The notes under the pieces are model-generated. The model did no database searches, was not told the origin of the DNA, and worked only from the letters and a program-made list of their open reading frames with translations. Below, piece after piece: positions 3,640-64,000 of a stretch of 64,000 nt of DNA (position 1 is the stretch's first letter; each line of letters begins with the position of its first letter). The position numbers and the translations under genes were made by a program. The DNA is from Octopus bimaculoides (taxonomy: Eukaryota). The DNA is taken from positions 36,252,027 through 36,316,026 of the forward strand of contig NC_068983.1 in assembly GCF_001194135.2 (NCBI RefSeq), written 5' to 3'.

Positions 3640-4033
3640 GACAGCACCACATGACTGGCATCCGTGCTAGTGGAGTACTAAGAGCACCAGCTGAGCATTA
3701 TCGTGGCCAGGGACGCTGCATGGCCCCCGTGCCGGTGGCACGTAAGGAGTACCATTTGAGCGTGATCCTTACCAGCATTGCCTTACTGGCACTTGTGCTG
3801 GTGGTATGTGGAAAACGCCATTTGAGCATGGCCGTTGCCAGTACCGCCTGACTGGCCCTCATGTTGGTGGCATGTAAAAGCACCCACTACACTCTCGGAG
3901 TGGTTGGCGTTAGGAAGGGCATCCAGCTGTAGAAACTCTGCCAGATCAGATTGGAGCCTGTTGCAGCCATCTGGCTCACTACTTCCCAGTCAAACCATCC
4001 AACCCATGCCAGCATAGAAAGCAGACGTCAAAC

Positions 4034-4073
<40 letters not shown>
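3640..4073 (+). mobile_element. (ATG)n-tailed interspersed repeat, probably an RTE-dependent SINE/LINE derivative; the most abundant family here
   Basis: Core gagtggttggcgttaggaagggcatccagctgtagaaactctgccagatcagattggagcc...gacgttaaacgatgatg. About 20 copies, e.g. 262-517, 1517-1720, 2530-2830(-), 10165-10495(-), 13110-13258(-), 15265-15600, 18324-18530(-), 18630-18830, 34635-34800, 37080-37460(-), 44345-44540, 52935-53150(-), 56700-56920(-), 61880-62090(-). Confidence 0.85.
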
Positions 4074-6508: not shown

Positions 6509-6567
<59 letters not shown>

Positions 6568-10555: not shown

Positions 10556-10598
10556 GATTCTTCTTCTTCTTCTTCTTCTTCTTCTTCTTCTTCTTCTT

Positions 10599-10674
<76 letters not shown>
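10556..10674 (+). repeat. (CTT)n(ATT)n compound microsatellite
   Basis: Direct reading; explains the poly-L/I and poly-K/N ORFs. Confidence 0.95.
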
Positions 10675-15054: not shown

Positions 15055-15144
<90 letters not shown>

Positions 15145-23224: not shown

Positions 23225-23834
23225 CTTTTTCTACTCTAGGCACAAGGCCCGAAATTTTTGGGGAGGGGGCCAGTTGATTAGATCAACCTCAGTACGCAAC
23301 TGGTACATAATTTACCAGCCCTGAAAGGATGAAAGGCAAAGTCAACTTTGGTGGAATTTGAACTCAGAATGTAAAGACAGTCGAAATACCGCTAAGCATT
23401 TCACCCGGTGTACTAACGTTTCTTATTTCTTTATTGCCCACAAGGAGCTAAACNNNNNNNNNNAAAGACAGTCGAAATACCGCTAAGCATTTCACCCGGT
23501 GTACTAACGTTTCTTATTTCTTTATTGCCCACAAGGAGCTAAACATAGAGGGGACAAACAAGGACAGACAAAGGGATTAAGTCGATTACATCAACCCCAC
23601 TGTGTAACTAGTATCTAATTTATCGACCCCGAAAGGATGAAAGGCAAAGTTGACCTCGGCGGAATTTGAACTCAGAACGTAACAGCAGACGAAATACAGC
23701 TAAGCATTTCGCCTAGCGTACTAACATTTCTTATTTCTTTACTGCCCACAAGAGGCTACACACAGTGGGGACACACAAGGACAGACAAACGGATTAAGCC
23801 CGGCGTACTAACGTTTCTGCCAGCTCGCCGCCTT
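23225..23834 (-). mobile_element. Dimeric Nin/Deu-core SINE
   Basis: TSD aatagtggaggatgaatt (23207-23224, 23835-23852); contains an N gap with duplicated flanks. Confidence 0.8.
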
Positions 23835-24951: not shown

Positions 24952-25181
24952 NNNNNNNNNNNNNNNNNNNNNNNNNNNNNNNNNNNNNNNNNNNNNNNNN
25001 NNNNNNNNNNNNNNNNNNNNNNNNNNNNNNNNNNNNNNNNNNNNNNNNNNNNNNNNNNNNNNNNNNNNNNNNNNNNNNNNNNNNNNNNNNNNNNNNNNNN
25101 NNNNNNNNNNNNNNNNNNNNNNNNNNNNNNNNNNNNNNNNNNNNNNNNNNNNNNNNNNNNNNNNNNNNNNNNNNNNNNNNN
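24952..25181. other. Assembly gap
   Basis: Run of N. Other gaps at 23454-23463, 26749-26758 and 36386-36565. Confidence 1.
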
Positions 25182-27308
25182 GACCCTGAAAGATGAGAGG
25201 CAAAGTCGACCTCGGCAGAATTTGAACTCAGGACATAATGACAGACGAAATACCGCTAAGCATTTCACCCGGAATGCTAACGTTTCTGCCAGCTCACCGC
25301 GTTTTCCTTCATTTCCTTCAGATATTACAAGATGGAATCACTGATATATATATATATATGACAGGCTTCATTCAGTTTCTTTCATCCTATCAAATCCACT
25401 CAGCCAGAGGCTACAAAAGACACTTGCCTAAGGTACCATGTAGAAGGACTGAACCTAGAATCATGTATCTGAGAAATAAAATAAACCTCTTAACCACACA
25501 TCCTCACCTATGCCTATGTCATACCTGTGTCTAAATGAAAAATGGTAACACTGAACAGAACAACATCAACATCAACAACACATATCATTCATTTATCACG
25601 TCAGTTTAGCATGGGTTTCTAGTAACTCCTCTCAGAATTTCAAAAAACTACAAAATATTTACAAATGCAATAAAGTATGCAGTTGCTTATTATATTGCAT
25701 AAATGCAAGTTGCAACCCACTGCACATTTGAAGACCACCTACAGATGAACTGATGAATGAGCTTACACGTCATAGCTCAACCTCTTAAAAATAGCAGCCA
25801 AATCACATACTGTGCTGTAATCAGGACTGATGTAAAGCTAAACAACAAAAACAACAACAACAACAACACCAACAACAACCGTAACAACCTGCAAAGTGAA
25901 ACGCCTACACCTTGATTTTAAATGTCAAGAGAATGGTTCAGAACAAAACCACAATGTTTTGATTCCTACAGCTGTTTAAGCATAAACGCCCACATAAATA
26001 AACACTATTTCACTCACCTGATTCTGATTGAGGGTTGGGGTAGGTACTGGGGGTTAGCAAAAAGCAACACACAAAAAAATAAAAAAATAAATGAGAGGTA
26101 AACAAAATGTGGAACCAAAATACTAAACCTGAGAGTTCCTCAAAACTCAGATTGTCTGATAGATTTCCCTATTCTTTTATTTGTTTCAGTCATTTGACTG
26201 CAGCCATGCTGGAGCACTGCTTTTAGTTGAACAAATCAACTATCTTTTGATAGTTGAGCAACTATCTTTTGATACGGACACAACACAGGCTACACTTTCA
26301 GGTTTATGGGATAAAGTTTACAGAAATAACCCAATAGGTTTATCATTAAATCCATGAAATATTATAGTAAGAGAATAGTAAGAGATTAATTGAGTAGCTT
26401 GAATATAAAAGGTTTCACTGTTTGCAAGATCCTAGTGTGATCCTGGTACTTATTGGATTAAAATACAATAGTTGGATCCACCATCAACATTAAATCACAA
26501 ACTCTTTCTCATTATAAGATTATTAGATTCATTACATTTTAATAAAGTATAGATATTCTTCATCTAACCAATATTAGCTGTGAAGTAAAAGTAAAAGATG
26601 ATAAGGTCAGAATAAAATATCAACACATATCCAGAGTTGTCTCCCATATTTTGTTATTTAAAGGTTAGTGGTTGCTTAATATTGTTTTTCTGGCAGAAAT
26701 GTTAATACACCAAGCAAAATGCTTAGCAGTATTTCGTCTGTCTTTACGNNNNNNNNNNTACACCAAGCAAAATGCTTAGCAGTATTTCGTCTGTCTTTAC
26801 GTTCTGAGTTCAAATTCTGCCGAGGTCGACTTTGCCTCTCATCCTTTCGGGGTCGATTAAATAAGTATCAGTTACGCACTGCGATCAGCGCAATCAACTT
26901 AATCCCTTTGTCTGTCCTTGTTTGTCCCCTCTGTGTTTAGTCCCCTGTGGGCAATAAAGAAATAAATATTGTTTTTCTTTAAGGCAGTGAGCTGGCAGAA
27001 ATGTTAGCATGGCGAGCAAAATGCTTAGCAATATTTCATCTGTCTTTACATTCTGAGTTCAAATTCCACCGAGGTCGACTTTGCCTTTCATCCTTTCGAG
27101 GTTGATAAATTAAGTACCAGTTGCATACTAGGGTTGATCTAATTGACTGGCCCCCGCCCCCAAAATTTCGGGCCTCGTGCCCGGAGTAGAAAAGAATATT
27201 GTTTTAACTTTTTTATTTTTCTTATTGCATATCTATAATTTCTAGTTAATGTGTTGACTCTACAACAGTTCTCCTGAATAGTTTTTTTTTTTTTTTTAAA
27301 TTTTGCAG

Positions 27309-34547: not shown

Positions 34548-35357
34548 GGGAAATTTTGAACCTGGGTTCTCATTCCTAAGGTATTTTTTGATGTTGTTGT
34601 TGTTACTATTATTATTATTATTATTATTATTATTCCAGAGTGGTTGGCGTTAGGAAGGGCATCCAGCTGTAGAAACTCTGCCAAATAAGATTGGAGCCTG
34701 GTGTAGCCATCTGGTTCACCAGTCCTCAGTCAAATCGTCCAACCCATGCCAGCATGGAAAGCGGACGTTAAACGATGATGATGATGATGATGATGATGAT
34801 TCCATCAAATGTAAATAATGTAAATAATGTACATAATTCCTCATGTCTCAAATATAGAACTGTATGAGTACATGATGTTTGTTGGAGGACAAAAGGGTGA
34901 AAAAAAAAAGGCGCTAAATGATCCTTTTGGGAAAAATCTGTGAGAGAAGACTGAGCAAGACACAGGAATAAGTGGTGAAGGTTAATCTTAAGATGCTAAA
35001 CTTCACAAAGAGCCAGAACAAAGGACCAGAACCAAATGGTAAGACATTGTGCTAGAGAAGACATAACCGATCCATGAAAGCATAGAAAACAAACATAAAA
35101 TGATGATGAGGAGGAGAAGGATGATTATTGTTTTACCATCCACTCTTCCATGCTTGCATGGATGAGATGGAATTTATTGAGGCAGATTTCTATGGCTGGA
35201 TGCCCTTCCTGTCACCAATCATTACCTGCTTCCAAGCAGGGTAACATTTCTCCTTGGCCAGATATGTTTCCATAGAAGATTGGAAACGAAGGATAATACT
35301 CATAAGATTGTGACATTTGCTTGCAACTATCATTCAATGTCAAGATGAGGGGACACC

Positions 35358-36379: not shown

Positions 36380-36565
36380 ACAACANNNNNNNNNNNNNNN
36401 NNNNNNNNNNNNNNNNNNNNNNNNNNNNNNNNNNNNNNNNNNNNNNNNNNNNNNNNNNNNNNNNNNNNNNNNNNNNNNNNNNNNNNNNNNNNNNNNNNNN
36501 NNNNNNNNNNNNNNNNNNNNNNNNNNNNNNNNNNNNNNNNNNNNNNNNNNNNNNNNNNNNNNNNN

Positions 36566-37079: not shown

Positions 37080-37116
<37 letters not shown>

Positions 37117-38274
37117 CTTAACGTGTCTGTTTGCCATGTTGGCATGAGTTGGATGGTTTGGCAGCAGATGGCAAGCCAAAGGGCTGCAACCAGGCTTCAG
37201 TCATCTGTTTTTCGTATGGTTTCTATGACTGGATGCCCTTCCTAATGTCAATTACTTTACTGAGTGGACTGACTGGCTGTTTATTATGTGGTGCTGGTAC
37301 AGGTGCTTTTTATGTGGCACAGGTACTTTTTATGTGGCACAGGTGCTTTTTATGTGGCACCAGGGTTGGCAAGGGGCTTGCAAGACGGGCGCCAAAGCTG
37401 AGAAAGAGAGAGGAACCAAGAGAAGTGGCTGTGTGCCAGACAAGAGGCTGGAATATGACAGTCAGGAATAGCTGTTTTATTACAGAGGAAATTCTTGGTT
37501 ACCACATATGAACAAGGAAGCAGAGGGAAATGAGAGAGAGAGAAAAAGAAAGATACAGTCAGAGTGAGTGAGTGAAAGAGAGAGAGAGAGAGGTGGGGGT
37601 CTTATCCACTATCCAGTAATTCCTTCCAATTTCTATTCACAAGGCTTTAGTCATCCCGTGAGTTACAGAAAACATCTACCTGAAGTGTTCAGAAGTGGGA
37701 TCAAGTCTGAGACCCAAAGGTTAACCACACAGCTATGCCTGCTTATATCCAACACAGACAATCATTGTTGTCAACTTTCAACTTTAATTTCTACTCATTT
37801 ATAGTATTTTAAGCATAATTGTGAAATTTAAGGTTTAACCGTGTAACATGATGTGTTCCCCACATTGTGTATCTTATGGTTTTAATGTCTCTGAATATTA
37901 TTTCATCTTCACATCTCTCCAAAAAAAATACATATTCATATTTGCTAATGAATTAAAGAGTTCAAGAAAATTAGAAAATTAGTAAAAGGAAAATTAGTAA
38001 AAAAGAAAATTAGTAAAAAACATTCTAATTAAAAGAGAAAAAGAAAGACTAAAGAAATTCATTGAGTCTGAAGAACATAAAGCAAAAACAATTTTTGATT
38101 GTCCTGGTACAACATTTAATACAACTTCAGACAATCGTTGTTGACTGAGTGTTAATTTGGAAAAATATTAAGGATGGTTCCAGACCAGATTAATTTTGAA
38201 ATTAATAAGAATATTATATAAGCATAATTTTTACAGTCAAACCATTTGCCTAAACAGAAGATTGTATGTATAAG

Positions 38275-39194: not shown

Positions 39195-39925
39195 CCACAG
39201 AGGCAATGTGGCTGATGCTGGTGTTGCATAACTTGTACCCATGCTAGTGGCATGTTAAAAGCACCTTTCGAGAGCTGGGCCTCGTGGAGGCAATGACAAA
39301 TGACAGACCTTTGGCAATATGCTGTGCTTGAGAAGAAGACCTATCAAGCCAAATAAAAACATGGTCATGGCAGATACAGGTGTCACGCAACTGGCACTTG
39401 TGCCAGTGGCTAATAATAGCACCCATTATACTTTCAGAGTGGTTGTTGTTAGGAAGGGCATCCAGCTGTAGAAACCATGCCAAATCAGACTGGAGTTTGG
39501 TGAAGCTCCTTAGCTTACAAGCCTTGGTCAAACTGTCCAACCTATGCCAGCATGGACAATGGATGTTAAATGATGATGATGATGTGCCTTGAGCGAGGTT
39601 ATTGCCAGTGCCTCGAGTGAGGTCGTTGCCAGTGCCTCGAGTAAGGTCGTTGCCAGTGCCCCTGGACTGGCTCCTGTGCAGGTAGGACATAAAAAACACC
39701 ATTTTGAGCATGGCCACTGCCAGTTCCGCATGACTGGCTCTCATGTCGGTGGCATGTAAAAGCACCCACTACACTCTCGGAGTGGTTGGCGTTAGGAAGG
39801 GCATCCAGCTGTAGAAGCTCTGCCAGATAAGATTGGAGCCTGGTGTCGCCATCCGGTTCACCAGTCCTCAGTCAAATCGTCCAACCCATGCTAGCATGGA
39901 AAGCGGATGTTAAATGATGATGATA
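39195..39925 (+). mobile_element. Two consecutive (ATG)n-tailed repeats with an internal 24-bp x3 expansion
   Basis: Tails at about 39570-39583 and 39913-39924; gtgcctcgagtgaggtcgttgcca x3 at 39584-39655. Confidence 0.75.
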
Positions 39926-44083: not shown

Positions 44084-47000
44084 ACATACATACATATATA
44101 TATATCTCCAAGAATGTAAAGAATGCTTCAATTCCTTACAATCTCAGATTTTTATTTGTATTTTTAGCAACATTAATTGTTAAACTGCGAGTTGTATGGT
44201 GATTGTCAGCTTATTGAAATTTCCCTTGATTTCAGTATGGGACAAAGCGTGTAATTTAAGAGGGTTAATAAACTCTTTTTATCACGTATTGTTCACCATT
44301 TGTCATTTATACTACTAGCTGTATACATACTTGAAGCTAACTAACTTCCACACGTAAAAACACCCACTACACTCTTGGAGTGGTTGGCGTTAGGAAGGCC
44401 ATCCAGCTGTAAAAACTCTGCCAAATGAGATTGGAGCCTGGGGTAGTCACCTGGTCCACCAGTCCTCAGTCAAATCGTCCAACCCATGCCAGCATGGAAA
44501 GCGGACGTTAAACGATGATGATGATGATGATGATGATGACACACAAAACAAAGGGCAGTTGATTGGTAGAATAAATAAAGTATGTTTAATTGGGGCCTTT
44601 TATGCTCAATTCTTACTGAGGTTGATTTTGTCTTTCATTCTTGTAGAATCAATAAAATAAGGCAACAGTAAAATACTGGGGCTAATATTACTGACAGTAC
44701 CTACCCTCATGGAATCAATACTGCTTACCAGTCATTGATGGATACTTCTGATCACTGAAGTCTATCATCTGTAGGAGTGTAAGGAAAAAAATACAAAACA
44801 ACAACAATAAAAAGATTCAAGGTAGAAGATATTTTTAATTACACCAGAACTGTACAAAGTGACTACAAAAATAGAAGTTATTACTGTACACTGTACTGTG
44901 GGAATATTTGATAGAAGACTTCAACACTTGTTTCAGAGCTGGCATAACACCACCACTGCCGCCACCAACACCATCGCCATTATTTGCTTCTTTCCTATTC
45001 AATCTCAACGAGACAAGGATCCAGTATGTTGTTGTATATGTGGAGATATCCAACTGTATTCATGTAACATAGAATTGGAAGTATATATGTTTGATATTCC
45101 AAAATGATGTCAACCCATACAACAAAAGATTAACTCTTGATGTCAACCAGTCCGAGACTGCCTCAAACTCTTTAAATAGAAAAAAATCCACCGGTTTTAA
45201 AGTGTTCATATTTTAATTAAAACCTTCCATCATTGTTTTATGTAGAGACATTTTTGTTATGTTATAATATACAAGCTTAATTAATGAAAAAACAAAAAGT
45301 TACTAAACTAAATTTCTCCAAATAATTCATTGATTAAAAAAAAAATATTAATTAAAACAGGCAGTTATTTTGATAGAAAAATAATCAGAAAAGAGTTAAA
45401 ATTTTACATATTTTGCTTTGTTCTTGATTATCTCAGAACTAGATAACAACAATACTGATGGAAGAGAACATCTAGCTTGGAGTCTGAATCACTTTTCTAA
45501 AACATTCGTTTTGAAATGATTTTGTATTATTTTCTTTAGTCTGTGTCATAATAAAATTGGTTGATATAACCATAGTGCGGACACCTCCATCATCAATGAC
45601 ACCCATGGTAGTTCTTCACCTTGATACTGTAAGTTTACAAAACACACGTATTATACACACACACACACATATATCTATATATACATGGGCAGTAGGTGAG
45701 AGCTAGATATGTTCTGTATAAAAAACACTTAGCAGAGCTCAAATGAATTTGAACTTAAACACTAAATTTTTCATCTAGTGTTAGGTTCTTAACATCAAGA
45801 GTGGCTATAAGAGAGATCCAAGATGCAGATAAACACAGTTAGGCTTGACACATATATACATACATACATATACATATATATATTATATATGCAGTGTTCA
45901 TTTTGTCTTCAATACAGGAATAAGCAGCACTTATTCCTCACAGTAACTATTTACAGCTAAGTAGACAGGACTATTGCAGATTAAATGTGTTTAGTATGGA
46001 TGAACACGATGCAGCATTGGTGAATGGATGTGATCTGACAACACTTCAAATGATAAACCGACACCCTGTTAACCTAGTCAGCTGCAAATTTAATTCTGTG
46101 ATTAGAAGATTATGTAAGGAAGAAGTGCGAAAGATTTGCAAATAAAAAAACAAACAGAAAATAGCAGTAGGCACTTTTAATTTGTTAGTGATGACGGAAT
46201 GAATTTATTTCGCATATAATGGAGGACAACCTGTTTGAGTACAGCCATGCATTGGCATTCATAGCCCTTGTTTAACTTGCTAGCAATGTCTTGCAAAGCA
46301 TAAGCACCTTTCCCTTACAATGGTTGACACAGGTGGGAGATCTCCATATGACTCTTTCTTGGTGGGATGAATTCTCCAAGATATGTATAAGACTACAGGA
46401 CCGAAAAGGATGGTGTTCACAGGTTAAAAATGTCTGAGCAAGCTCAACCAGATGATGATAGAGGGATGAATAATACATTCTTACAAATGGGTGTGTGTGT
46501 GTGTGTGCATAGTAAGAAGGTACATTTATTTATTCACTGAATCTGATATTTTGTATTATTTGGAATTAAAAAAAATTTTTTTTTAAAAAAGAGCTAATCT
46601 TTGACATATACATAATTTGCTGTGGAAATAGATAATCCCATGTTTAGAAAATATACAAGGTTGGTGATGGTGGTAAATGCTGGAAGAGGATGTCAATGTA
46701 GGGGACACAGGTTGATATTTATGGTTGTTCCCTTTTTGATAAGAACTAGGGAGTAAGAATGATTGATGAGAAAAGTTTTTTTTTTCTTTTCTGAGGAAAG
46801 AATTTAGTCTAGCTTTCTTTCCTGCTACTAACCCCTTGTAATTCACATTGAACATTCAAACACGCTAAATCCTCCCAGTTAGACTTTTCTTTAGTTTATG
46901 AAGGCTTGTACAGATTTTTCTTTTGCTAGTTTTAACCACTGTTAAATCGCCCTTATCACTTGATTAAAGGCTAAATTGGTGGAGTTGTTAAAGTGTTGGA

Positions 47001-50000: not shown

Positions 50001-51953
50001 TCTTAACCCATTGCATGTTACATAAATCTGGTGTCATACCCATTGCATGTTACAACACCAGAAATGGGATACAAATTCACAATATTTCTATCTCCAAAGC
50101 TCAAACTTTGTAATGTAAATAGATATGTTTTAATTCTTTCATACTGAGATCAACCAGGGCTAGTATGGGTGTTACAACAACAACAACAACCAGGGTTAGT
50201 GATTAACTATAATATATGTAAGCTGAACTAAAAAAAATTCTCCTGGAAAAGATTACAGTCTATCACAAGAAATGTTTTCTGGAAATCTAGATATTTAATA
50301 TTCAGTGTGGTAACCGGAGGTATGTACACATGAATAAAGTATCTTATCCCAGAAATACATTGAAATAGCTACAGTGGATCTGAACTCATGTTTGATGGGC
50401 CAGTAGTCTGTCTTACCCACTCAACTATTTTGCTTTTACTAGGTAAAGTCAAAACTTAATTTTGAACTTAAGACATATGAGTGATTCAATGAATTAATTT
50501 TACAACCAATAAATGGCTGTTACCACATTAAGTGTAGTGTTAGACGATAACATAGCTTATAGCTGAAATTATAAAATATAGTACAGTTAAAATTGATAGA
50601 ATCACTATAGAATATAGTACTGGGAGATACAATAAGTGACGATAGCATAATATATATATCAAAAAGATAGTATAGGTATAAATGATACTGTAACTATTAG
50701 CAGGTAGTATGTCTAAAGAGGTTAGTATAGTTATGGAATTAGAACTAAATATATAACTTAATCAGTTTCAAACATACTGCTTACTTTAAATGTAAACATA
50801 CAGTTGTAATTCACTTTAAACATGTTGTTATATAACTGGATTATTGTTTGTACAAATGATATATATTTTGGGTAGTAGGAATTAAAAACTAGGATATCAT
50901 TGTGGGTTTGGCTGGTGGAAACCCTACAGACTTCCACATTTGATATTTCTAGTAATAGAAATAAAGTGAAACAAGCTTGGTACTGGACCAATTTATAATA
51001 ATATTAAAATCAAAAAATAAAGAAAACAAAAAGTCATGGTATTTTGAAGATACTTAATGAGTCATAACGGTTTGTATGAATGTGATTGGTTAACAGCTTC
51101 AGAATAAGGGTACTAACTTTATCTTCCACAACATCATGGATGGTAAATGACATGGTATGACACAGAAGTTTGGGATACCAGTTGTTCAAAGATATCCACT
51201 CTTCCTATGTTGCTTTACAACTGTTTCACCGAATAAATATACTGTCTGGATTAAAAGAATACCATTTTCTGCCAAATATGTGTGTTCTTCAGAATAACTT
51301 TGCATTGGTGATGTTTTTTGAGTATTTTTTTTTAACACACAAATTATGTGGAACTGTTGAAACACATGATGGGAATTGTGACTTGTTTCCTGGTTTTCTG
51401 CTAGTCACTGGTCTAACTGGAGAGTAATTCACGATAATAAATACATACATGCATACATAAGCAAACTTACAGTTTAGATAATGAGTAATTTAACAAAGAA
51501 TCTCTTGGTTTTCAGAGATACGTTAACTCAATCGAAAAACTTAATGTAGAATATATTTGAGACTCAAGAACAAGAGACAAAGAGAGTATAAGTTGAGGAC
51601 TGCCTTCATGAGTGTACAGTTGCCCCCATGAGTATGTAAATGCTTCAATAAAGTGCAGTGATGATGGTGGTGGCAGTGGCTGCCTCTGTTTAGTAACTGC
51701 TTCAATGAGGAAAGGAAGTGGTGGTGATAGTGGCTGCCTCCAATGTAGTAACTAACTCAATGAGGAGTTGGAGCTTTGGTGGCTGCCTTAGAGTAGTGGT
51801 GAATGCCACTGAAGGAAAGCAACTGAAGCAGTCAAAGATGTTTTGTGTCAAAAAATGTAGAGATCTGAAGGTGACTGAAAGAAAATATCAGTGACTGGTC
51901 TCATTATCTTCTGGTTGGTTTACCATTTATAACTTGTTATCTCAAAGTCAATG

Positions 51954-51963
51954 TCACACTTCC
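51954..51963 (-). CDS. PLEKHG5: RhoGEF PLEKHG5-like terminal coding segment: G GAA GTG TGA completing ...S-E-V-stop (class I PDZ ligand)
   Basis: Pyrimidine tract tttgtttttccaattctgtaatttCAG followed by GGAAGTGTGA. A phase-2 join gives TCG GAA GTG TGA = SEV*, the same last residues as vertebrate PLEKHG5/Syx (TASEV). Confidence 0.85.
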
Positions 51964-52349
51964 CTGAAATTACAGAATTGGAAAAACAAATTAAGTTAAT
52001 TGATTTAAAATTCATTAGAAATAGATTTTATTTTAAAACATAATGCTGAATCAAAATTGAGACATAACTTTTGAAATAAGAAACACGACAAACCTTTTTA
52101 ATTACCTTTAGTTAAAAAATCCTTAGAGGCCTATTTATGTAGCAAACCCCAAATATGCCAATGGGTGTTCATTAGGCTGCTAGAAAAAGCAGCTAAATTT
52201 ACCTTGAATCACAAGCAATTATCTTAAAAATGAAGGACTCAAAGATGGTACAATAACAGTAAAACACCTTTGATTATAGAGCTGTTCAAGCATTGCTGAC
52301 CTAAGGCTGAACAACAACAAAGTTTAAACTCTGTAGGGTTTCTGTCCCT

Positions 52350-52712
52350 TATAAGTGACCCTGCATCTGCACATGTACATATGAGTTTGAGCAAGTTGTA
52401 TTGTGGAAGACTTGCAGTTGTTCATGAATGGAGGTCTTTCTTCTCTACACCACTGATGTGTATCTGTTGTGTAGACCACCGCTGTCGAAGAAGTAGGATC
52501 TCCCAAGACATATAAATAGAGGTAGTCTGGCCATGGTGGGAGTGTTGAGTAGCAGTCGAGTAGCGGTTGAGTAGAGATCATCCGAAGGTGCTAGATAGCA
52601 GTAGCTTGAGACATAACAGTATCCAAGGGAAAAGGCTGTCAACTTGTACTGATACAACTTGTACTGATACAACTTAGCACCAGTCTTGTTGTTGCAGACA
52701 CTGCTGTCAAAA
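52350..52712 (-). repeat. Interspersed repeat, inverted partner of 54620-54810
   Basis: Shared cagtgtctgcaacaacaagactggtgc and gatacacatcagtggtgtagagaaga...catatg.acat.tgcagatgcagggt. Confidence 0.75.
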
Positions 52713-53251
52713 CACAAACAACAGGAAAAAACACTGCAAAGCATCTTGCCTGACCTTCTAATAGTTCTACTAATCCACCATAGCAGATTGGTATTCTTTT
52801 ATTGACCCTAAAAGGGTGAAAGGCAATGGTGACCTCAGGAGATTCTACCAATTCTCCACCTTCCAAACCTTGGAAGTAAAAATATACACTAAATACTTAA
52901 CTTCCTCAACTAAGCTGTTGCTGCCATCACCACCACTATCATCATCATCATTTAATGTCCATCTTCCATGCTGTCATGGTTTGGATGGTTTGATGGAATC
53001 CAATCATTTTTGACTGTGTCAAACTTTAGTGTCAGCTTTGGCATGGTTTCTATGGCTGGAAGATGCCCTTCCTAATATCAACCACCTTATAGAGTGCGCT
53101 GGGTACTATTTTCATAGCATTGGCACTAGTAAGGTTGCTAAGTAGCTTACAAGACAATGTCTTCTTACAATAAAGATGAATTGGCATTTTTATATCAAGT
53201 TTGTTTAATGCAGTTAAGATTTTTATAAAATAAAATAAAATATTAACTTAC

Positions 53252-54147
53252 GATTCATTATTGCTGTTCAATAGGAGGTATTTTTTAATAACCAGAACCT
53301 GCGTATGGTTTAAGCCTTCGTAGTTCACATCAAGACCTGTGATATCTACAGAGGAAATACCATCTTTCATTTCACTTGGACACACATCATGTAGAAGAGC
53401 AGCTATATCAGGCATAGACTTTGATAGACTCTTGTTTTCTGTGTTAAGAGTTAAATAGTTCTCATTTGGTTCAGTCAGCAATGGTTCTTCTGGAACATTT
53501 ACTGGAGTTGTTTCTTCTTCATTTTCATTGTTTTCATGATCAGGACTCAAATGAGAAGAGCAAGTTGAACTCACTCCGCTTGAACTGCGGATACTGTCTG
53601 AACTTACATGTTTGTAGAGACTTTGTCGATTCTCTTTATGAGTTGAACCTGAGTTCCATGAGAATCTTTTATGAATAGTATTATCAGGATGTTCTTTTCT
53701 TTTAAGTTCTTGGATAGAATCAGCAGTATTGTACCGTTTTTCAGTCTTGCGTTTTCTTTCTGATTTACATTTTGTCTCTTCTGCAACTCCTCGTGAAAGC
53801 CAGTCAGAACTAGCACAAGATGGCATTGAATGGCTTGTCTTCATTTCTGAGGTTGGCAGCAGAAGAGAAGAACCTGTTTGTGTTTCTGGAGATGGACTTT
53901 CACAGACAATAAGTGGGCTTATCATTGTTTGTTCAGAAGTGCTGTTCTGAAGCTTTTGTTTGGTAAAAGAGAAAGAGTTTGGTCGGCTTTTCTCATGAAA
54001 CTTTGGGGAAGGAGAAGGATCAGTAAATTTATCATATTTTCCTTCCTGGAATGAACTTCGGTATTGTATTTTTGGAGAAGTTTTAATGTCCCCTATGGTT
54101 TGGTATAGCTGATGTCGAACAGGTTGGTTAGCTTCATTAAACAAGAG
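53252..54147 (-). CDS. PLEKHG5: RhoGEF PLEKHG5-like, large Ser/Lys/Glu-rich low-structure tail exon
   Basis: The only long non-repetitive ORF (298 aa in track). Poly-T acceptor then CAG|CTCTTG, donor GAATC|GTAAGT, 896 nt, phase 0-2. Ends LNHTQVLVIKKYLLLNSNNES, similar to PLEKHG5 [22 protein letters not shown]. Confidence 0.88.
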
Positions 54148-55517: not shown

Positions 55518-55630
55518 CTTTGCTTTGTTAATATGTTCGATGAAGTTTTTTATAGAAGCAGAATCAGCATGGAGGATGAATGCCATTATAGGAACAATGT
55601 AATCATTTGTTTGTATCACCAATATGGATC
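55518..55630 (-). CDS. PLEKHG5: RhoGEF PLEKHG5-like, second PH exon (GSILVIQTNDYIVPIMAFILHADSASIKNFIEHINKAK); absent from ORF track
   Basis: Acceptor tttgaatttCAG, donor AAG|GTAAAG, 113 nt, phase 1-0, exactly complementing the flanking exons. Resembles [22 protein letters not shown]...WVDTIYNAQ of PLEKHG5. Confidence 0.88.
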
Positions 55631-57221
55631 CTGAAATTCAAAGAAGAAAACTGAGTTAATTGGATGAATGAGAAACAAGTTAATATGATGCCATGTTTAA
55701 ATGAAGCATGTCTAATCTGATTGGAAATGAGGAAATGTCTATCTAAAGATAGTGAGTGGAGAGATGATACCAGGAGAGAAACCATATACACAGGATGCCT
55801 GCTTTTATCAATTATATTATGTAACCAGAAGCAAAGAATGTAAGGTCTTCCTTCCTTTCGTTTGCTATTTACTGAAACACCTACTCATCACATAAATGGT
55901 TCAGTTTTACTTAGCACTGCCAGAACTTGTTGCTACTGACGATGATGATGACAGTGACAATGATAATTATGACGATAGTGCTGAAATAGGGAGCTATAAG
56001 AGAAGGAACTGTTGGTGTTGATTGCTTAACTGGGGACCAATCCTAAAACTGCTGGAAGTTATGTAACACTATAACAGAATTCCTCTATATTAATTGGTAA
56101 TCTCCAAACGGATATCTGCTTTCATTCTTGGAAATTAGTAATTAGCAACTTAAAGGAACAAGATAACAGATACACTTAGATACCAAAATCAGTCACAGAA
56201 GAAAACCATGGAGGTGGTGGCAGTGGTGATGATGAGTAAGCAACTTGATGAATGAATGAACCTTTATAGAAAATATCTTCTCTGTCGATCTACTTGGTGG
56301 TGGTGGGGGATGCAAATGTACAGTAGCCTTTTCTACTACAACTCTAATGACTTCTGCCCCCTATATCTTGGACCCATGTTACATGCTACTCAGTTATCAT
56401 CATCCCATTTGCCTATTCTTGCCTCATTATTCTTGTGTTCAACACTACAAGCTTTGCACTAATTACAATAATGTTGACAGGGAAAAATAACATTCAGTGA
56501 AGAGAGACAATGATTGGTTCCACCTTTTTAAAGCCCTACATATTCTGGAATTTCCTTATGAATATGTTCCATATTTCTGAGACGATACATTCTATACCTA
56601 GTTGAAGATTTGGAGAAAAAATTCCAGTTAAGGAAGCCGAAACTAGAATCAAGAGATTTCAAAATAAACCTAACAGAGATAGGAGTCTACACTGCCGCTG
56701 CCACCATCATTTAACTCCTGTTTTCCATGCTGGCATGTGTTGGACAGTTTTTGGCATGGTTTCTACAGCTGGATGCCTTTCCTAATGCCAACCATTTTAC
56801 AGAATATACCAGGTGCCTTTTAGATGGCACTGGCACCTGTGCTTTTTATGTCACACCAGTGATGGTGCTTTTTACATGACACCATCACCAATGGGGTCAC
56901 CAAGTACTTTGCAAGACAAAAAAGGCAAATACATTATCTAACTGAATTCGGTTTCCATTATTGTAGTAAAGTAAAATATTTTGTTGCTATCTTCTAAATG
57001 GAAATGATTAGTTTAGATCAGTATTTCTCAACTGGGGTTCCCTGGAACCTTAGGGATTCCATGAGAAAGAGTGAGATAAGCTAATGTTAATTTCATGATC
57101 GTAATATTACTAGACATGCACAACATTGGTTATTGTAATATTGTAATATAAACATCATCCTATCTCACCTGTCATGTTATCAAAAAAATATAACTATTTA
57201 GTGATGTCTGTAATTTATGGA

Positions 57222-60457: not shown

Positions 60458-60593
60458 CTTTGTCTTTGAGTTCTGCAAGGCTAATTTGATCAACTCTAAT
60501 TGGTGGTTTCAATACTTTCAGACGATCATTAAGTTTTTTCAATTTGCATATAAGCAGAAGGTCAGTGAAAAGATAACATTCGACATCTTGCTG
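60458..60593 (-). CDS. PLEKHG5: RhoGEF PLEKHG5-like, PH domain exon (QQDVECYLFTDLLLICKLKKLNDRLKVLKPPIRVDQISLAELKDK)
   Basis: Acceptor ttgttctccCAG (tandem CAGCAG), donor AAAG|GTAAAT, 136 nt, phase 0-1. CYLFTDLLLICK...KVLKPP matches the PH start of PLEKHG5/6/7 (CFLFTDLLLVTK...RVIRPP). Confidence 0.9.
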
Positions 60594-61440: not shown

Positions 61441-62338
61441 AGACTCCAGGAGTTTCAACAAAACCCAAGTAATTGAATGAAACAGAACATCTCAAAATAA
61501 ATAGAGCAACAAAAGGGTTAATATGGATCTAGGAGTCAATTTATCCATGATCATCATGTCTTTTGTCTTTCTCAATTATGATGTATCTAAGACTACATGT
61601 CTTTTCTCTTTTCTAAAACAAGTGGTTGTGATTTTAGAGAGATCTAGCAGCTCTTTTTAGCACTTTAAATGACTACATAGAAGATCTCTCTTCAGTTTGT
61701 AGTTTCTAGAATTTGGAAAAATTAAATCTAGTGGCTACAAATAAATCTATAAAACCTTTTATGAATGAAAGACAGCAAAATTTTAAAATATTATCACATT
61801 TTAACTCTCTCCTTTAAGCATTTCTCATGTAATTTCAACATTATCATCATCACCACCAACTCTTTCTAAAAATAATAGTGATTATCATCATCATCATTAC
61901 TTAACATCCACTGGTATTGGCTGGGTAGTTTGGCAGGATGCAATGGGTTCAAAGACTGTCTCATGCTCTGATGTCGGGTTTTGCATACTTTTTATGGCCA
62001 AACACCCTTCCTAATGTCAACCACTTTATAGAGTTTACTGGATGCTTCTTTTTTCACACCATTGGCACTAATGAGATTGCCAGATAACTTGAAAGGCATT
62101 AAAGAAAAGGAGAAAAGGTAAAAAAAAGATCCTTTAAGTGTAGCCATTCAAAAGCTGAAAGTAGACAACCCTGTACAGGGTGCTTTTTTCCTTTAACAGG
62201 GTAAGACTATAGTAGAAAGGGAGGCAGCTTTATGTTCAGGCAAGAGGGATTAAAGTAAGAGAGAAAAATGCAACAATTAAAAAGACAAAATTAACTGTAA
62301 CAATGCGATAACAATTTATAAAATAAGCAAAATTTTAC

Positions 62339-63369: not shown

Positions 63370-63790
63370 TCATCATCATCATCATCATCATTATTTAACA
63401 TCCACTTTCCATGCTAGCAAGGGTTGGATGGTTTGACTGAGAACTGGCCAGCTGGGGGTTGCACCAGGCTCCAATCTGATTTGGCAAGGTTTCTACAGCT
63501 GGATGCCTTTCCTAACACCAACCACACTGAGAGTGTAGTGGGTGCTTTTTATGTGTCACCATCATGGGAGCCAGTCAGGGAGCACTGGCACCGATGACGT
63601 TTGGATGGTGCTTTTCATGTGCCACCAGTATGGGAGCCAGTCAGGGGGTACTAGCATTGACTATGTTCAGATGATGCTTTTTATGTGCCACCAGCACAGG
63701 AGCCAGTCAGTGGGCACTGGCATTGGCCACATATGCATGGTACTTTTTTACATGTCACTGGCATGAGAGCCAGTCAGGGGCGACTGGCAT
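63370..63790 (-). mobile_element. (ATG)n-tailed repeat with a 66-bp x4 internal minisatellite
   Basis: Units start at 63542, 63608, 63674 and 63740. Confidence 0.75.
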
Positions 63791-64000
63791 TGACCGATGG
63801 CACTGTTATTGTTTAGAATTCATTCATGCATGTAGAACTATATAAACAAGCCTGTAGGTGTTTCTCTTTTGTTGGGTAGGCACAAGGTGTGACAGAATTT
63901 TTGTTACTGTTGGTATTATTGGATTGAATCTTTTTGCTCTGACAACATAAAGGTCAAAGGTATAAAGTCCAGTATTTAGGCCCTTAGCAATTGTATGTGT

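What the first reader, a model, noticed from the sequence alone, without database searches (positions are those of the whole stretch)
51954..53253. Splice-or-stop switch for a two-residue PDZ ligand, apparently shared with mammalian Syx
Seen: the donor reads TC|GTAAGT. Unspliced, the codons are TCG TAA (protein ends NNES*). Spliced to the acceptor at 51963, they are TCG GAA GTG TGA (ends NNESEV*). Established: mammalian PLEKHG5/Syx has isoforms Syx1 (PDZ motif, ...SEV) and Syx2, which lacks the last two residues and localises differently. Inference: the same on/off control of RhoGEF scaffolding may exist in a mollusc, implying very deep conservation of a gene-architecture switch.
Basis: partly seen in the sequence, partly recalled or inferred. 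Interest (0 to 1): 0.7.

Follow-up and report, generated by a model that had tools for sequence, protein, structure and literature searches.

The report
Ancient last intron splitting Syx PDZ tail
The window holds the 3' end of a mollusc-type PLEKHG5/Syx RhoGEF gene whose last intron sits two codons before the stop, at the same place and phase as in bat, pigeon, alligator and amphioxus, so splicing adds the PDZ-binding tail SEV; the stop met without splicing is a by-product of the splice-site consensus, and use as a switch in this animal is untested.

Summary
On the minus strand a large exon ends ...NNES with TC|GTAAGT, so unspliced it reads TCG TAA. The acceptor at 51963 gives TCG GAA GTG TGA, that is ...ESEV*.

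The gene is a PLEKHG5/Syx ortholog; its closest named relatives are bivalve and gastropod PLEKHG5.

The same phase-2 intron inside the Ser(-2) codon, followed by a 7-nt coding tail, is present in every locus I could read. These are four other lophotrochozoans, amphioxus, pigeon and bat; an alligator locus shows the donor only. The shared architecture with mammalian Syx is therefore shown, not merely apparent.

The stop at the donor is not a designed feature. In the same gene, 6 of 7 other phase-2 introns also stop immediately, against 1 of 38 for phase 0 and 0 of 10 for phase 1.

Isoforms lacking EV are annotated in many mammals (37 of 120 entries). They are also annotated in one abalone (a pair identical but for EV), and another abalone's isoform ends the same way; a nemertean swaps the tail at the same junction. 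None appears in the listed oyster, scallop, shrimp, barnacle or amphioxus isoforms.

Here the intron is long, AT-rich and repeat-filled, with a consensus donor core and a strong acceptor tract, so constitutive splicing is the most likely behaviour. A regulated switch is possible but unproven. This is a new member of a known kind, of moderate interest.

The parts
60458..60593 (-). Coding exon for part of the PH domain (QQDVECYLFTDLLLICK...AELKDK, ends AAAG|gtaaat, phase 1).
   Evidence: Splice sites read. Exact limits and an open joined frame. tblastn matches to L002, L003 and L004. Weak Pfam PH-domain hit (SOS1_NGEF_PH, E=0.0011, below the cut-off). The acceptor could also lie 3 nt upstream (cag|cag).
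55518..55630 (-). Coding exon for the end of the PH domain (GSILVIQTNDYIVPIMAF...INKAK, ends AAG|gtaaag, phase 0).
53252..54147 (-). Large penultimate coding exon (896 nt). It carries the conserved C-terminal blocks TEKRY.TAD.IQE, SIHKR.SWN, SSSGVSS, KDGISSV and KKYLLLNS, and ends ...NNE + TC.
   Evidence: Alignment A1 with invariant columns. It is 54-57% identical to P0001 and P0002 and 33-36% identical to named oyster, mussel and abalone PLEKHG5.
53248..53253 (-). Split Ser(-2) codon plus the in-frame stop met if the intron is kept: TC|G TAA.
   Evidence: The same arrangement occurs in L001, L003, L004, alligator and pigeon (TAA) and in amphioxus and bat (TGA).
51964..53251 (-). Last intron: phase 2, 1288 nt, 37% GC, donor GTAAGT, acceptor tract ttccaattctgtaatttcag.
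   Evidence: It holds five AATAAA or ATTAAA hexamers (nearest 42 nt from the donor), against about 2.1 per kb expected from composition. No similarity to the L001 intron beyond about 30 nt.
52922..53156 (.). Copy of a dispersed repeat inside the last intron. Further repeat pieces lie at 52354-52464 and 52655-52713.
   Evidence: blastn of the intron against the rest of the window gave up to 14 overlapping matches for 52922-53156. The other two pieces match 54798-54613, in the upstream intron.
51954..51963 (-). Coding part of the terminal exon: G GAA GTG TGA. It completes Ser and adds Glu-Val-stop, giving the class I PDZ ligand S-E-V.
   Evidence: Equivalent N GAR/CAA GTN stop pieces occur in seven other loci.
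50294..51953 (-). Presumed 3' UTR. Its end is unknown; the first canonical poly(A) hexamer (ATTAAA) after the stop is at 50299.
   Evidence: Inference from the hexamer scan. No transcript data.

Best explanation
The window carries the last four coding exons of a PLEKHG5/Syx-type RhoA exchange factor, on the minus strand. The 5' part, including the DH domain, lies beyond base 64000.

Its last intron (53251-51964) is an ancestral bilaterian intron that interrupts the codon of the serine at position -2. Normal splicing joins TC to G GAA GTG TGA and produces the C-terminus ...E-S-E-V. This is a class I PDZ ligand. In vertebrates and C. elegans the equivalent tail tethers the GEF to scaffolds such as MUPP1/Patj/MPZ-1 and synectin.

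If the intron is not removed, translation ends at the TAA that forms part of the GTAAGT donor. The protein then lacks only EV. No exon junction lies downstream of that stop, so such an mRNA should escape nonsense-mediated decay.

The stop itself is a by-product. The exon end (..A TC) is fixed by coding and lacks the usual AG, so the donor relies on a consensus intronic part, and in phase 2 that part reads as a stop.

Shown: the sequence anatomy, the orthology, the conservation of intron position and phase, and the existence of annotated isoforms lacking EV in mammals and abalone.

Inferred: that in this animal the intron is mostly spliced out, and that any form lacking EV is a minor product rather than a regulated one.
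For: - Anatomy.
- Orthology: the query modelled on the related locus L003 retrieves named PLEKHG5 from molluscs, an annelid, nemerteans, arthropods, amphioxus and vertebrates. The window's own partial protein is best matched by those mollusc entries.
- C-termini across Bilateria are A-S-[EDQ]-V.
- The same phase-2 intron and 7-nt coding tail occur in L001-L004, pigeon L006, amphioxus L007 and bat L008. The donor alone is seen in alligator L005.
- Selection acts on the spliced product. In bivalve L002 the Ser codon has changed family across the intron: AG|GTAATG ... cag|T gives AGT (Ser) when spliced but AGG (Arg) when unspliced.
- The stop is generic. In the same gene, 6 of 7 other phase-2 introns stop at once, against 1 of 38 for phase 0 and 0 of 10 for phase 1. 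All three donors visible in the window read GTAA.
- The two bivalve sequences whose exon ends in AG have relaxed intronic donors: GTAATG in L002, and a donor that reads AGG TGG with no stop in P0011.
- All 13 transcript-like invertebrate contigs end S/T-x-V, the spliced form.
- The intron here is long, AT-rich, repeat-filled and without conserved sequence.
Against: - RefSeq models lacking EV exist for abalone: P0295 against P0296 are identical for 1380 residues, and P0283 also ends ...EAS.
- Lineus longissimus has alternative tails, STT against EV, at exactly this junction.
- 37 of 120 mammalian entries lack EV.
- The mouse isoforms are reported to behave differently.

Use of this junction is therefore real in several lineages and cannot be excluded here. 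A 7-nt coding terminal exon has been kept in every lineage sampled. An ATTAAA lies 42 nt into the intron. No RNA data for this species were available.
Confidence: 0.68

Rival explanations
1. Regulated splice-or-stop switch. The animal deliberately produces both the SEV form (bound to scaffolds) and the form lacking EV (free), by retaining the last intron or by polyadenylating within it. On this view the device dates back to the bilaterian ancestor and is the reason the intron has been kept.
For: - The position and phase are conserved in all nine loci with DNA.
- Isoform pairs differing by EV occur in many mammals, and one pair plus a further isoform ending the same way in abalones.
- A nemertean switches its tail at the same junction.
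- A functional difference between Syx1 and Syx2 is reported.
- The stop would be immune to nonsense-mediated decay. This is inference from established knowledge of that pathway.
- An ATTAAA lies 42 nt after the donor.
Against: - The stop is expected for any phase-2 donor.
- One bivalve lacks the immediate stop.
- In L002 the unspliced form would end in Arg, not Ser.
- The listed isoform sets of Crassostrea (15), Ostrea (7), Saccostrea (4), Argopecten (5), Penaeus (7 named), Amphibalanus (14 RefSeq) and Branchiostoma (14 complete) contain no form lacking EV.
- The 13 transcript-like invertebrate contigs are all spliced.
- The intron here is 1288 nt, 37% GC, has a consensus donor core and a good acceptor tract, and is made largely of repeats.
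- Poly(A) hexamers are not clearly enriched.
- Ancestral intron positions are widely conserved in these slowly evolving lineages without any special function (established knowledge).
Confidence: 0.25
2. There is no terminal micro-exon here. The gene simply ends ...NNES* at 53248, this lineage has lost the PDZ ligand, and the SEV acceptor at 51963 is a coincidence.
For: - Prokaryote-style ORF calls for the closest relatives (P0001, P0002) end at NES.
- The window's tail (NNES) differs from the usual VEAS.
Against: - The chance of the motif in 6 kb is 0.045.
- It carries the best acceptor tract among the tail-ending candidates listed for this window.
- The closest relative, L001, has the same ...atttcag|A GAA GTA TGA behind a 17-of-20 tract.
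- The same piece is present in all other loci.
Confidence: 0.04

Closest known systems
Mammalian PLEKHG5 (Syx/Tech) with its Syx1 and Syx2 isoforms
   Same: The gene family is the same and the C-terminal block is the same (..LLLNS....S-E-V). The phase-2 intron sits inside the Ser(-2) codon in both. In both the donor reads as an immediate stop (TC|GTGAGT in bat, TC|GTAAGT here) and the terminal coding piece is the same (G GAG GTC TGA in bat, G GAA GTG TGA here). Syx2 is described as two residues shorter and unable to bind PDZ domains.
   Different: The bat last intron is 286 nt and 61% GC; here it is 1288 nt, 37% GC and repeat-rich. The isoform lacking EV is documented and annotated in mammals but untested here. 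I could not read the original Syx2 paper (Liu and Horowitz 2006). That Syx2 arises by retention of this intron is therefore my inference from the gene structure together with the RefSeq pairs.
C. elegans RHGF-2
   Same: It is a PLEKHG5-family RhoA GEF with a class I C-terminal PDZ ligand (SDV). It binds the multi-PDZ protein MPZ-1 only when that motif is present (PMC3282746).
   Different: Its gene structure was not examined here. The authors only speculate about a C-terminally truncated isoform.
Annotated mollusc PLEKHG5 (Haliotis, Crassostrea, Ostrea, Mytilus and others)
   Same: They share the conserved C-terminal blocks and the ASEV tail. One Haliotis species has a RefSeq pair that differs only by EV, and a second species' isoform also ends ...EAS.
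   Different: They are only 33-36% identical to the window's partial protein. The window's tail is NNESEV rather than VEASEV, which suggests a mollusc lineage not represented among the named proteins. No DNA could be fetched for Haliotis because the gene exceeds 100 kb.
Other genes whose alternative 3' ends add or remove a PDZ ligand (for example SynGAP C-terminal isoforms)
   Same: The general principle is the same: C-terminal alternative processing decides whether the protein can dock to PDZ scaffolds (PMC3621422 was listed; I saw only its title and abstract).
   Different: I believe those cases use alternative exons or frames that encode different tails, but that is my own knowledge and was not checked here. 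In the present case the alternative would be plain non-removal of the last intron, and only two residues would change.

Membership tests
PLEKHG5/Syx/Tech/RHGF-2 RhoGEF family | Dbl-homology (RhoGEF) catalytic domain | not testable with these tools
   The DH-coding exons lie upstream of base 64000, outside the window. In the related locus L003 a RhoGEF (PF00621) exon lies upstream of the homologous terminal exon. A model built from L003 retrieves named PLEKHG5 proteins.
PLEKHG5/Syx/Tech/RHGF-2 RhoGEF family | PH domain directly after the DH domain | tested here: inconclusive
   Only the C-terminal half is in the window. Pfam SOS1_NGEF_PH scores E=0.0011 and 19.6 bits, below the cut-off of 27.7. 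The exons do align to the PH exons of L002-L004 and to named PLEKHG5 from residue 1 of the partial protein.
PLEKHG5/Syx/Tech/RHGF-2 RhoGEF family | Family-specific conserved C-terminal blocks, and best similarity to named PLEKHG5 | tested here: met
   There are 43 invariant columns in alignment A1, including EKRY.TAD.IQE, SSSGVSS and SKS..DI. The best named matches are oyster, mussel and abalone PLEKHG5, with E values from 1e-52 to 1e-43.
PLEKHG5/Syx/Tech/RHGF-2 RhoGEF family | C-terminal class I PDZ ligand, S/T-x-hydrophobic-COOH | tested here: met
   After splicing the tail is S-E-V. Orthologs end SEV, SDV, SQV or TEV. Actual binding was not tested.
Syx1/Syx2-type isoform pair (PDZ ligand on or off through the last intron) | Intron placed between Ser(-2) and the last two codons, with a stop met at once if it is unspliced | tested here: met
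   TC|G TAA at 53253-53248. The same position and phase occur in bat, pigeon, alligator and amphioxus.
Syx1/Syx2-type isoform pair (PDZ ligand on or off through the last intron) | Both mRNA forms are actually produced | not testable with these tools
   No transcript data for this species. Indirect evidence comes from RefSeq pairs in mammals, a pair in one Haliotis species with a second species' isoform ending the same way, and Lineus. Other invertebrate isoform sets hold no such form.
Syx1/Syx2-type isoform pair (PDZ ligand on or off through the last intron) | The two proteins differ in localisation and function | not testable with these tools
   Reported for mouse in review PMC4594598. An experiment is needed here.
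Typical regulated retained intron | Short, GC-rich intron with weak splice sites (a description from my own knowledge of the splicing literature, not checked in a paper here) | tested here: not met
   The window intron is 1288 nt and 37% GC, with a GTAAGT donor core and an acceptor tract of 15 of 20 pyrimidines. The bat and pigeon introns do fit on length and GC: 286 and 119 nt, 61% and 68% GC.

The most novel reading that the evidence does not exclude
Non-removal of the last intron of PLEKHG5, which deletes exactly the last two residues of the PDZ ligand, may be an ancestral bilaterian regulatory device kept by selection for more than half a billion years. On this reading the device is the reason a terminal exon with only 7 coding bases has survived in molluscs, other lophotrochozoans, amphioxus and vertebrates, and this mollusc uses it to release the RhoA GEF from its scaffolds.
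Probability: 0.2. Interest if true: 0.6.

Novelty: new member of a known kind. Interest (0 to 1): 0.4.

Why it matters
PLEKHG5/Syx localises RhoA activation by docking to PDZ scaffolds, and the form lacking two residues is reported to behave differently in mammalian cells. The exact gene architecture that makes this form possible turns out to predate the split between protostomes and deuterostomes. Annotation pipelines already call forms lacking EV in abalone and an alternative tail in a nemertean. This turns a mouse-specific observation into an evolutionary hypothesis that can be tested with ordinary RNA-seq.

The finding also carries a caution. An immediate stop after a phase-2 donor is the rule, not a signal, so this pattern alone should not be read as a switch elsewhere in the scan.

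Tried and rejected
- The original Syx2 paper (PMC1415294, doi 10.1091/mbc.E06-01-0002) and Garnaas 2008 (PMC2758496) are not held. How Syx2 mRNA arises therefore had to be inferred from gene structure.
- Literature searches for PLEKHG5 with intron retention or splice variants gave nothing on mechanism.
- Look-ups of Meles meles X6 and Limulus X2 failed because those are not the longest products on record.
- The Haliotis and Lineus loci returned no DNA because the genes exceed 100 kb. The donor of the abalone form lacking EV and the origin of the Lineus STT tail remain unseen.
- The alligator contig ends 213 nt after the donor, so its acceptor was not seen. Its annotated protein ending ..TAS is a truncation artefact, not isoform evidence.
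- A search for intron or 3' UTR conservation between the window and its closest relative L001 found only the exon plus about 30 AT-rich bases.
- The density of poly(A) hexamers in the intron is not convincingly above expectation.
- I considered whether Logan contigs ending ..EAS (P0029, P0002) were intron-retaining transcripts. I rejected this without testing it, because their ORFs start at the exon's first Met as in genomic DNA rather than running upstream through the PH domain.
- A first attempt at exon mapping with tblastn HSPs lost most exons. It was replaced by exact k-mer chaining.
- Pfam found nothing in three other long ORFs of the window.

Full report
**1. The observation**

On the minus strand the sequence reads ...AAC AGC AAT AAT GAA TC|G TAA GTT AAT.... 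TC occupies 53253-53252, the intron starts at 53251 with GTAAGT, and TAA (53250-53248) is in frame. An unspliced message therefore ends ...NSNNES*. The acceptor ...ttccaattctgtaatttcag ends at 51964, and the next bases are G GAA GTG TGA (51963-51954), which gives ...NNESEV*. Every coordinate in the finding is correct. The intron is 1288 nt with 37% GC.

**2. What the gene is**

The open frame ending at the donor is an 896-nt exon (54147-53252). Upstream of it, two further exons join in frame through canonical sites: 55630-55518 and 60593-60458. Together they encode the second half of a PH domain and a long C-terminal region, 384 residues in all.

A first search with this region found only unnamed ORF fragments from assemblies. 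Fetching their loci showed a RhoGEF exon upstream in one of them, L003. A model built from L003 retrieved 673 proteins. The named ones were PLEKHG5 from oysters, mussels, scallop, abalone, Aplysia, an annelid, nemerteans, arthropods, amphioxus and vertebrates. The window's own partial protein matches these mollusc entries best, at 33-36% identity and E values down to 1e-52. It matches two unnamed relatives at 54-57%.

The gene is therefore a PLEKHG5/Syx ortholog from a mollusc-like lineage that is not represented among named proteins. Its DH domain lies outside the window.

**3. The C-terminus is a deeply conserved PDZ ligand**

- Vertebrate proteins end ...[12 protein letters not shown].
- Molluscs end ...LLLSSNVEASEV.
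- The annelid Owenia, shrimp and barnacle end ASDV.
- Amphioxus ends TASQV.
- A scorpion and a nemertean end EASEV.

C. elegans RHGF-2 ends SDV and needs that motif to bind MPZ-1 (PMC3282746). The spliced tail ESEV of the window fits the class I pattern S/T-x-hydrophobic.

**4. The intron is shared**

Genomic DNA around the same point shows the following.

| Locus | Taxon | Exon end and donor | Acceptor and coding tail | Intron |
|---|---|---|---|---|
| L001 | closest relative of the window | TC\|GTAAGT | cag\|A GAA GTA TGA | 3449 nt |
| L002 | bivalve, 54% identical to Mactra | AG\|GTAATG | cag\|T GAA GTA TGA | 738 nt |
| L003 | lophotrochozoan of uncertain phylum | TC\|GTAAGT | cag\|T GAA GTA TGA | 2966 nt |
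| L004 | lophotrochozoan of uncertain phylum | TC\|GTAAGT | cag\|T GAG GTA TAG | 533 nt |
| L007 | amphioxus | TC\|GTGAGT | cag\|G CAA GTT TGA | 287 nt |
| L006 | pigeon | TC\|GTAAGT | cag\|G GAG GTC TGA | 119 nt |
| L008 | bat Hipposideros armiger | TC\|GTGAGT | cag\|G GAG GTC TGA | 286 nt |
| L005 | alligator | TC\|GTAAGT | not seen; the contig ends first | unknown |

In every case the intron is in phase 2 inside the Ser(-2) codon, and the terminal exon contributes 7 coding bases plus the stop. A site of this form is expected by chance 0.045 times per 6 kb. The architecture goes back at least to the last common ancestor of protostomes and deuterostomes.

**5. The stop is a by-product**

In phase 2 the intron bases +2 to +4 form a codon, and GTAA, GTGA and GTAG all give stops. 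As a control I mapped all other introns of the same gene in pigeon, bat and amphioxus, by exact k-mer chaining of the annotated protein onto the locus. The number of introns with a stop directly after the split codon was:

- phase 2: 6 of 7
- phase 0: 1 of 38
- phase 1: 0 of 10

All three donors visible in the window read GTAA.

Where the exon ends in the non-consensus ..TC, the intronic part is a full consensus (GTAAGT or GTGAGT). In the two bivalve sequences where the Ser codon has become AGY, the exon ends in the consensus AG and the intronic part is relaxed. L002 has GTAATG. P0011 reads AGG TGG and runs on for 13 residues with no immediate stop.

In L002 the unspliced product would end in Arg, while the spliced one keeps Ser. 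Selection is thus visible on the spliced tail and not on the unspliced one.

**6. Is the junction used as a switch anywhere?**

- **Mammals.** Review PMC4594598 states that Syx2 is two residues shorter than Syx1, cannot bind PDZ domains, and activates RhoA diffusely instead of at the leading edge. Among the 120 best mammalian entries, 83 end TASEV and 37 end TAS. The four pairs I inspected were identical except for EV: sea lion, bat, rhinoceros and beluga. The bat whose gene I read has such pairs. Together with the gene structure, this shows that the short form corresponds to non-removal of this intron or to termination within it. That last step is my inference, because the original paper was not available.
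- **Abalone.** One Haliotis species (assembly GCA_022045235.1) has RefSeq isoforms of 1382 and 1380 residues that are identical except for EV. H. asinina isoform X2 also ends ...EAS.
- **Nemertean.** Lineus longissimus X1 and X3 are identical for 1240 residues and then read STT or EV.
- **No such form.** None appears among the listed isoforms of Crassostrea virginica, Ostrea, Saccostrea, Argopecten, Penaeus, Amphibalanus (RefSeq) or Branchiostoma. All 13 transcript-like invertebrate contigs end S/T-x-V.

Use of the junction is therefore real but patchy outside vertebrates, at least at the level of annotation.

**7. This locus**

- The donor core is a perfect GTAAGT and the acceptor tract is good.
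- The intron is long and AT-rich.
- From about 95 nt after the donor it consists largely of interspersed repeats. The segment 52922-53156 has up to 14 overlapping matches elsewhere in the window, and 52354-52713 repeats part of the upstream intron.
- Nothing beyond the first 30 or so bases is similar to the closest relative's intron.
- Poly(A) hexamers occur 5 times in 1288 nt, against about 2.1 per kb expected. The nearest is an ATTAAA 42 nt from the donor. This is suggestive at most.

These features fit a constitutively spliced intron better than the short GC-rich last introns of bat and pigeon. A retained-intron mRNA would nevertheless be stable in principle, since no junction lies downstream of the stop. 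A minor form lacking EV is therefore plausible.

**8. Verdict**

The shared architecture with mammalian Syx is demonstrated and is ancient, but the stop is not evidence of design, and a working switch in this mollusc remains a hypothesis.

- About 0.68: constitutive ancestral intron with at most incidental product lacking EV.
- About 0.25: a genuinely regulated switch.
- About 0.04: the terminal exon is not real.

The case is a new member of a known kind (the Syx1/Syx2 architecture), of moderate interest.

Noticed in passing
L002:11084-11089 and 11824 (bivalve relative): The Ser(-2) codon has switched family across the intron, from TC|N to AG|T. The spliced product keeps Ser, but the unspliced one would end in Arg. 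The donor is GTAATG rather than GTAAGT.
   Followed up: partly
P0011 (bivalve ORF fragment, 68% identical to Mactra PLEKHG5): The reading frame runs past the exon end as ...EAR WVPQFHIFSCCF*. This donor has no immediate in-frame stop. It is the only exception among ten lineages.
   Followed up: partly
Lineus longissimus RefSeq isoforms P0312 and P0041: Ten of eleven listed isoforms end ...EASSTT and one ends ...EASEV. X1 and X3 are identical for 1240 residues before that point. An alternative terminal exon or acceptor at the same junction seems likely, but the DNA could not be fetched.
   Followed up: partly
window 52922-53156, with copies near 39396-39583, 61954-62098, 2621-2805, 44470-44541, 34730-34798, 63370-63436, 3990-4058, 37091-37266, 763-819 and 56750-56836: A dispersed, SINE-like repeat family with many diverged copies (69-82% identity) is spread through the window on both strands. 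Several mechanical ORFs with the motif FLQLDA(L/F)PN.NH seem to come from repeats; whether they belong to this family was not checked.
   Followed up: partly
window 24952-25181 and 36386-36565 (also 23454-23463 and 26749-26758): Runs of N, which are assembly gaps of 230, 180, 10 and 10 bases.
   Followed up: no
window 1-51000: No other convincing protein-coding gene was seen. Long ORFs are low-complexity or repeat-derived. Microsatellites are frequent, for example TG at 15055-15136, TTC and TTA at 10558-10674, and AAT at 6513-6566. Three long ORFs gave no Pfam match.
   Followed up: partly
L005:81186 (alligator, contig end): The GenBank protein called 'isoform B' ends ...TLTAS only because the contig stops 213 nt after the donor. 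It mimics a form lacking EV without being evidence for one.
   Followed up: yes
L006 and L008, downstream of PLEKHG5: In pigeon and bat the next gene downstream encodes a death-domain TNF-receptor-like protein and, in pigeon, NOL9 lies upstream. This synteny has no visible counterpart in the window.
   Followed up: no
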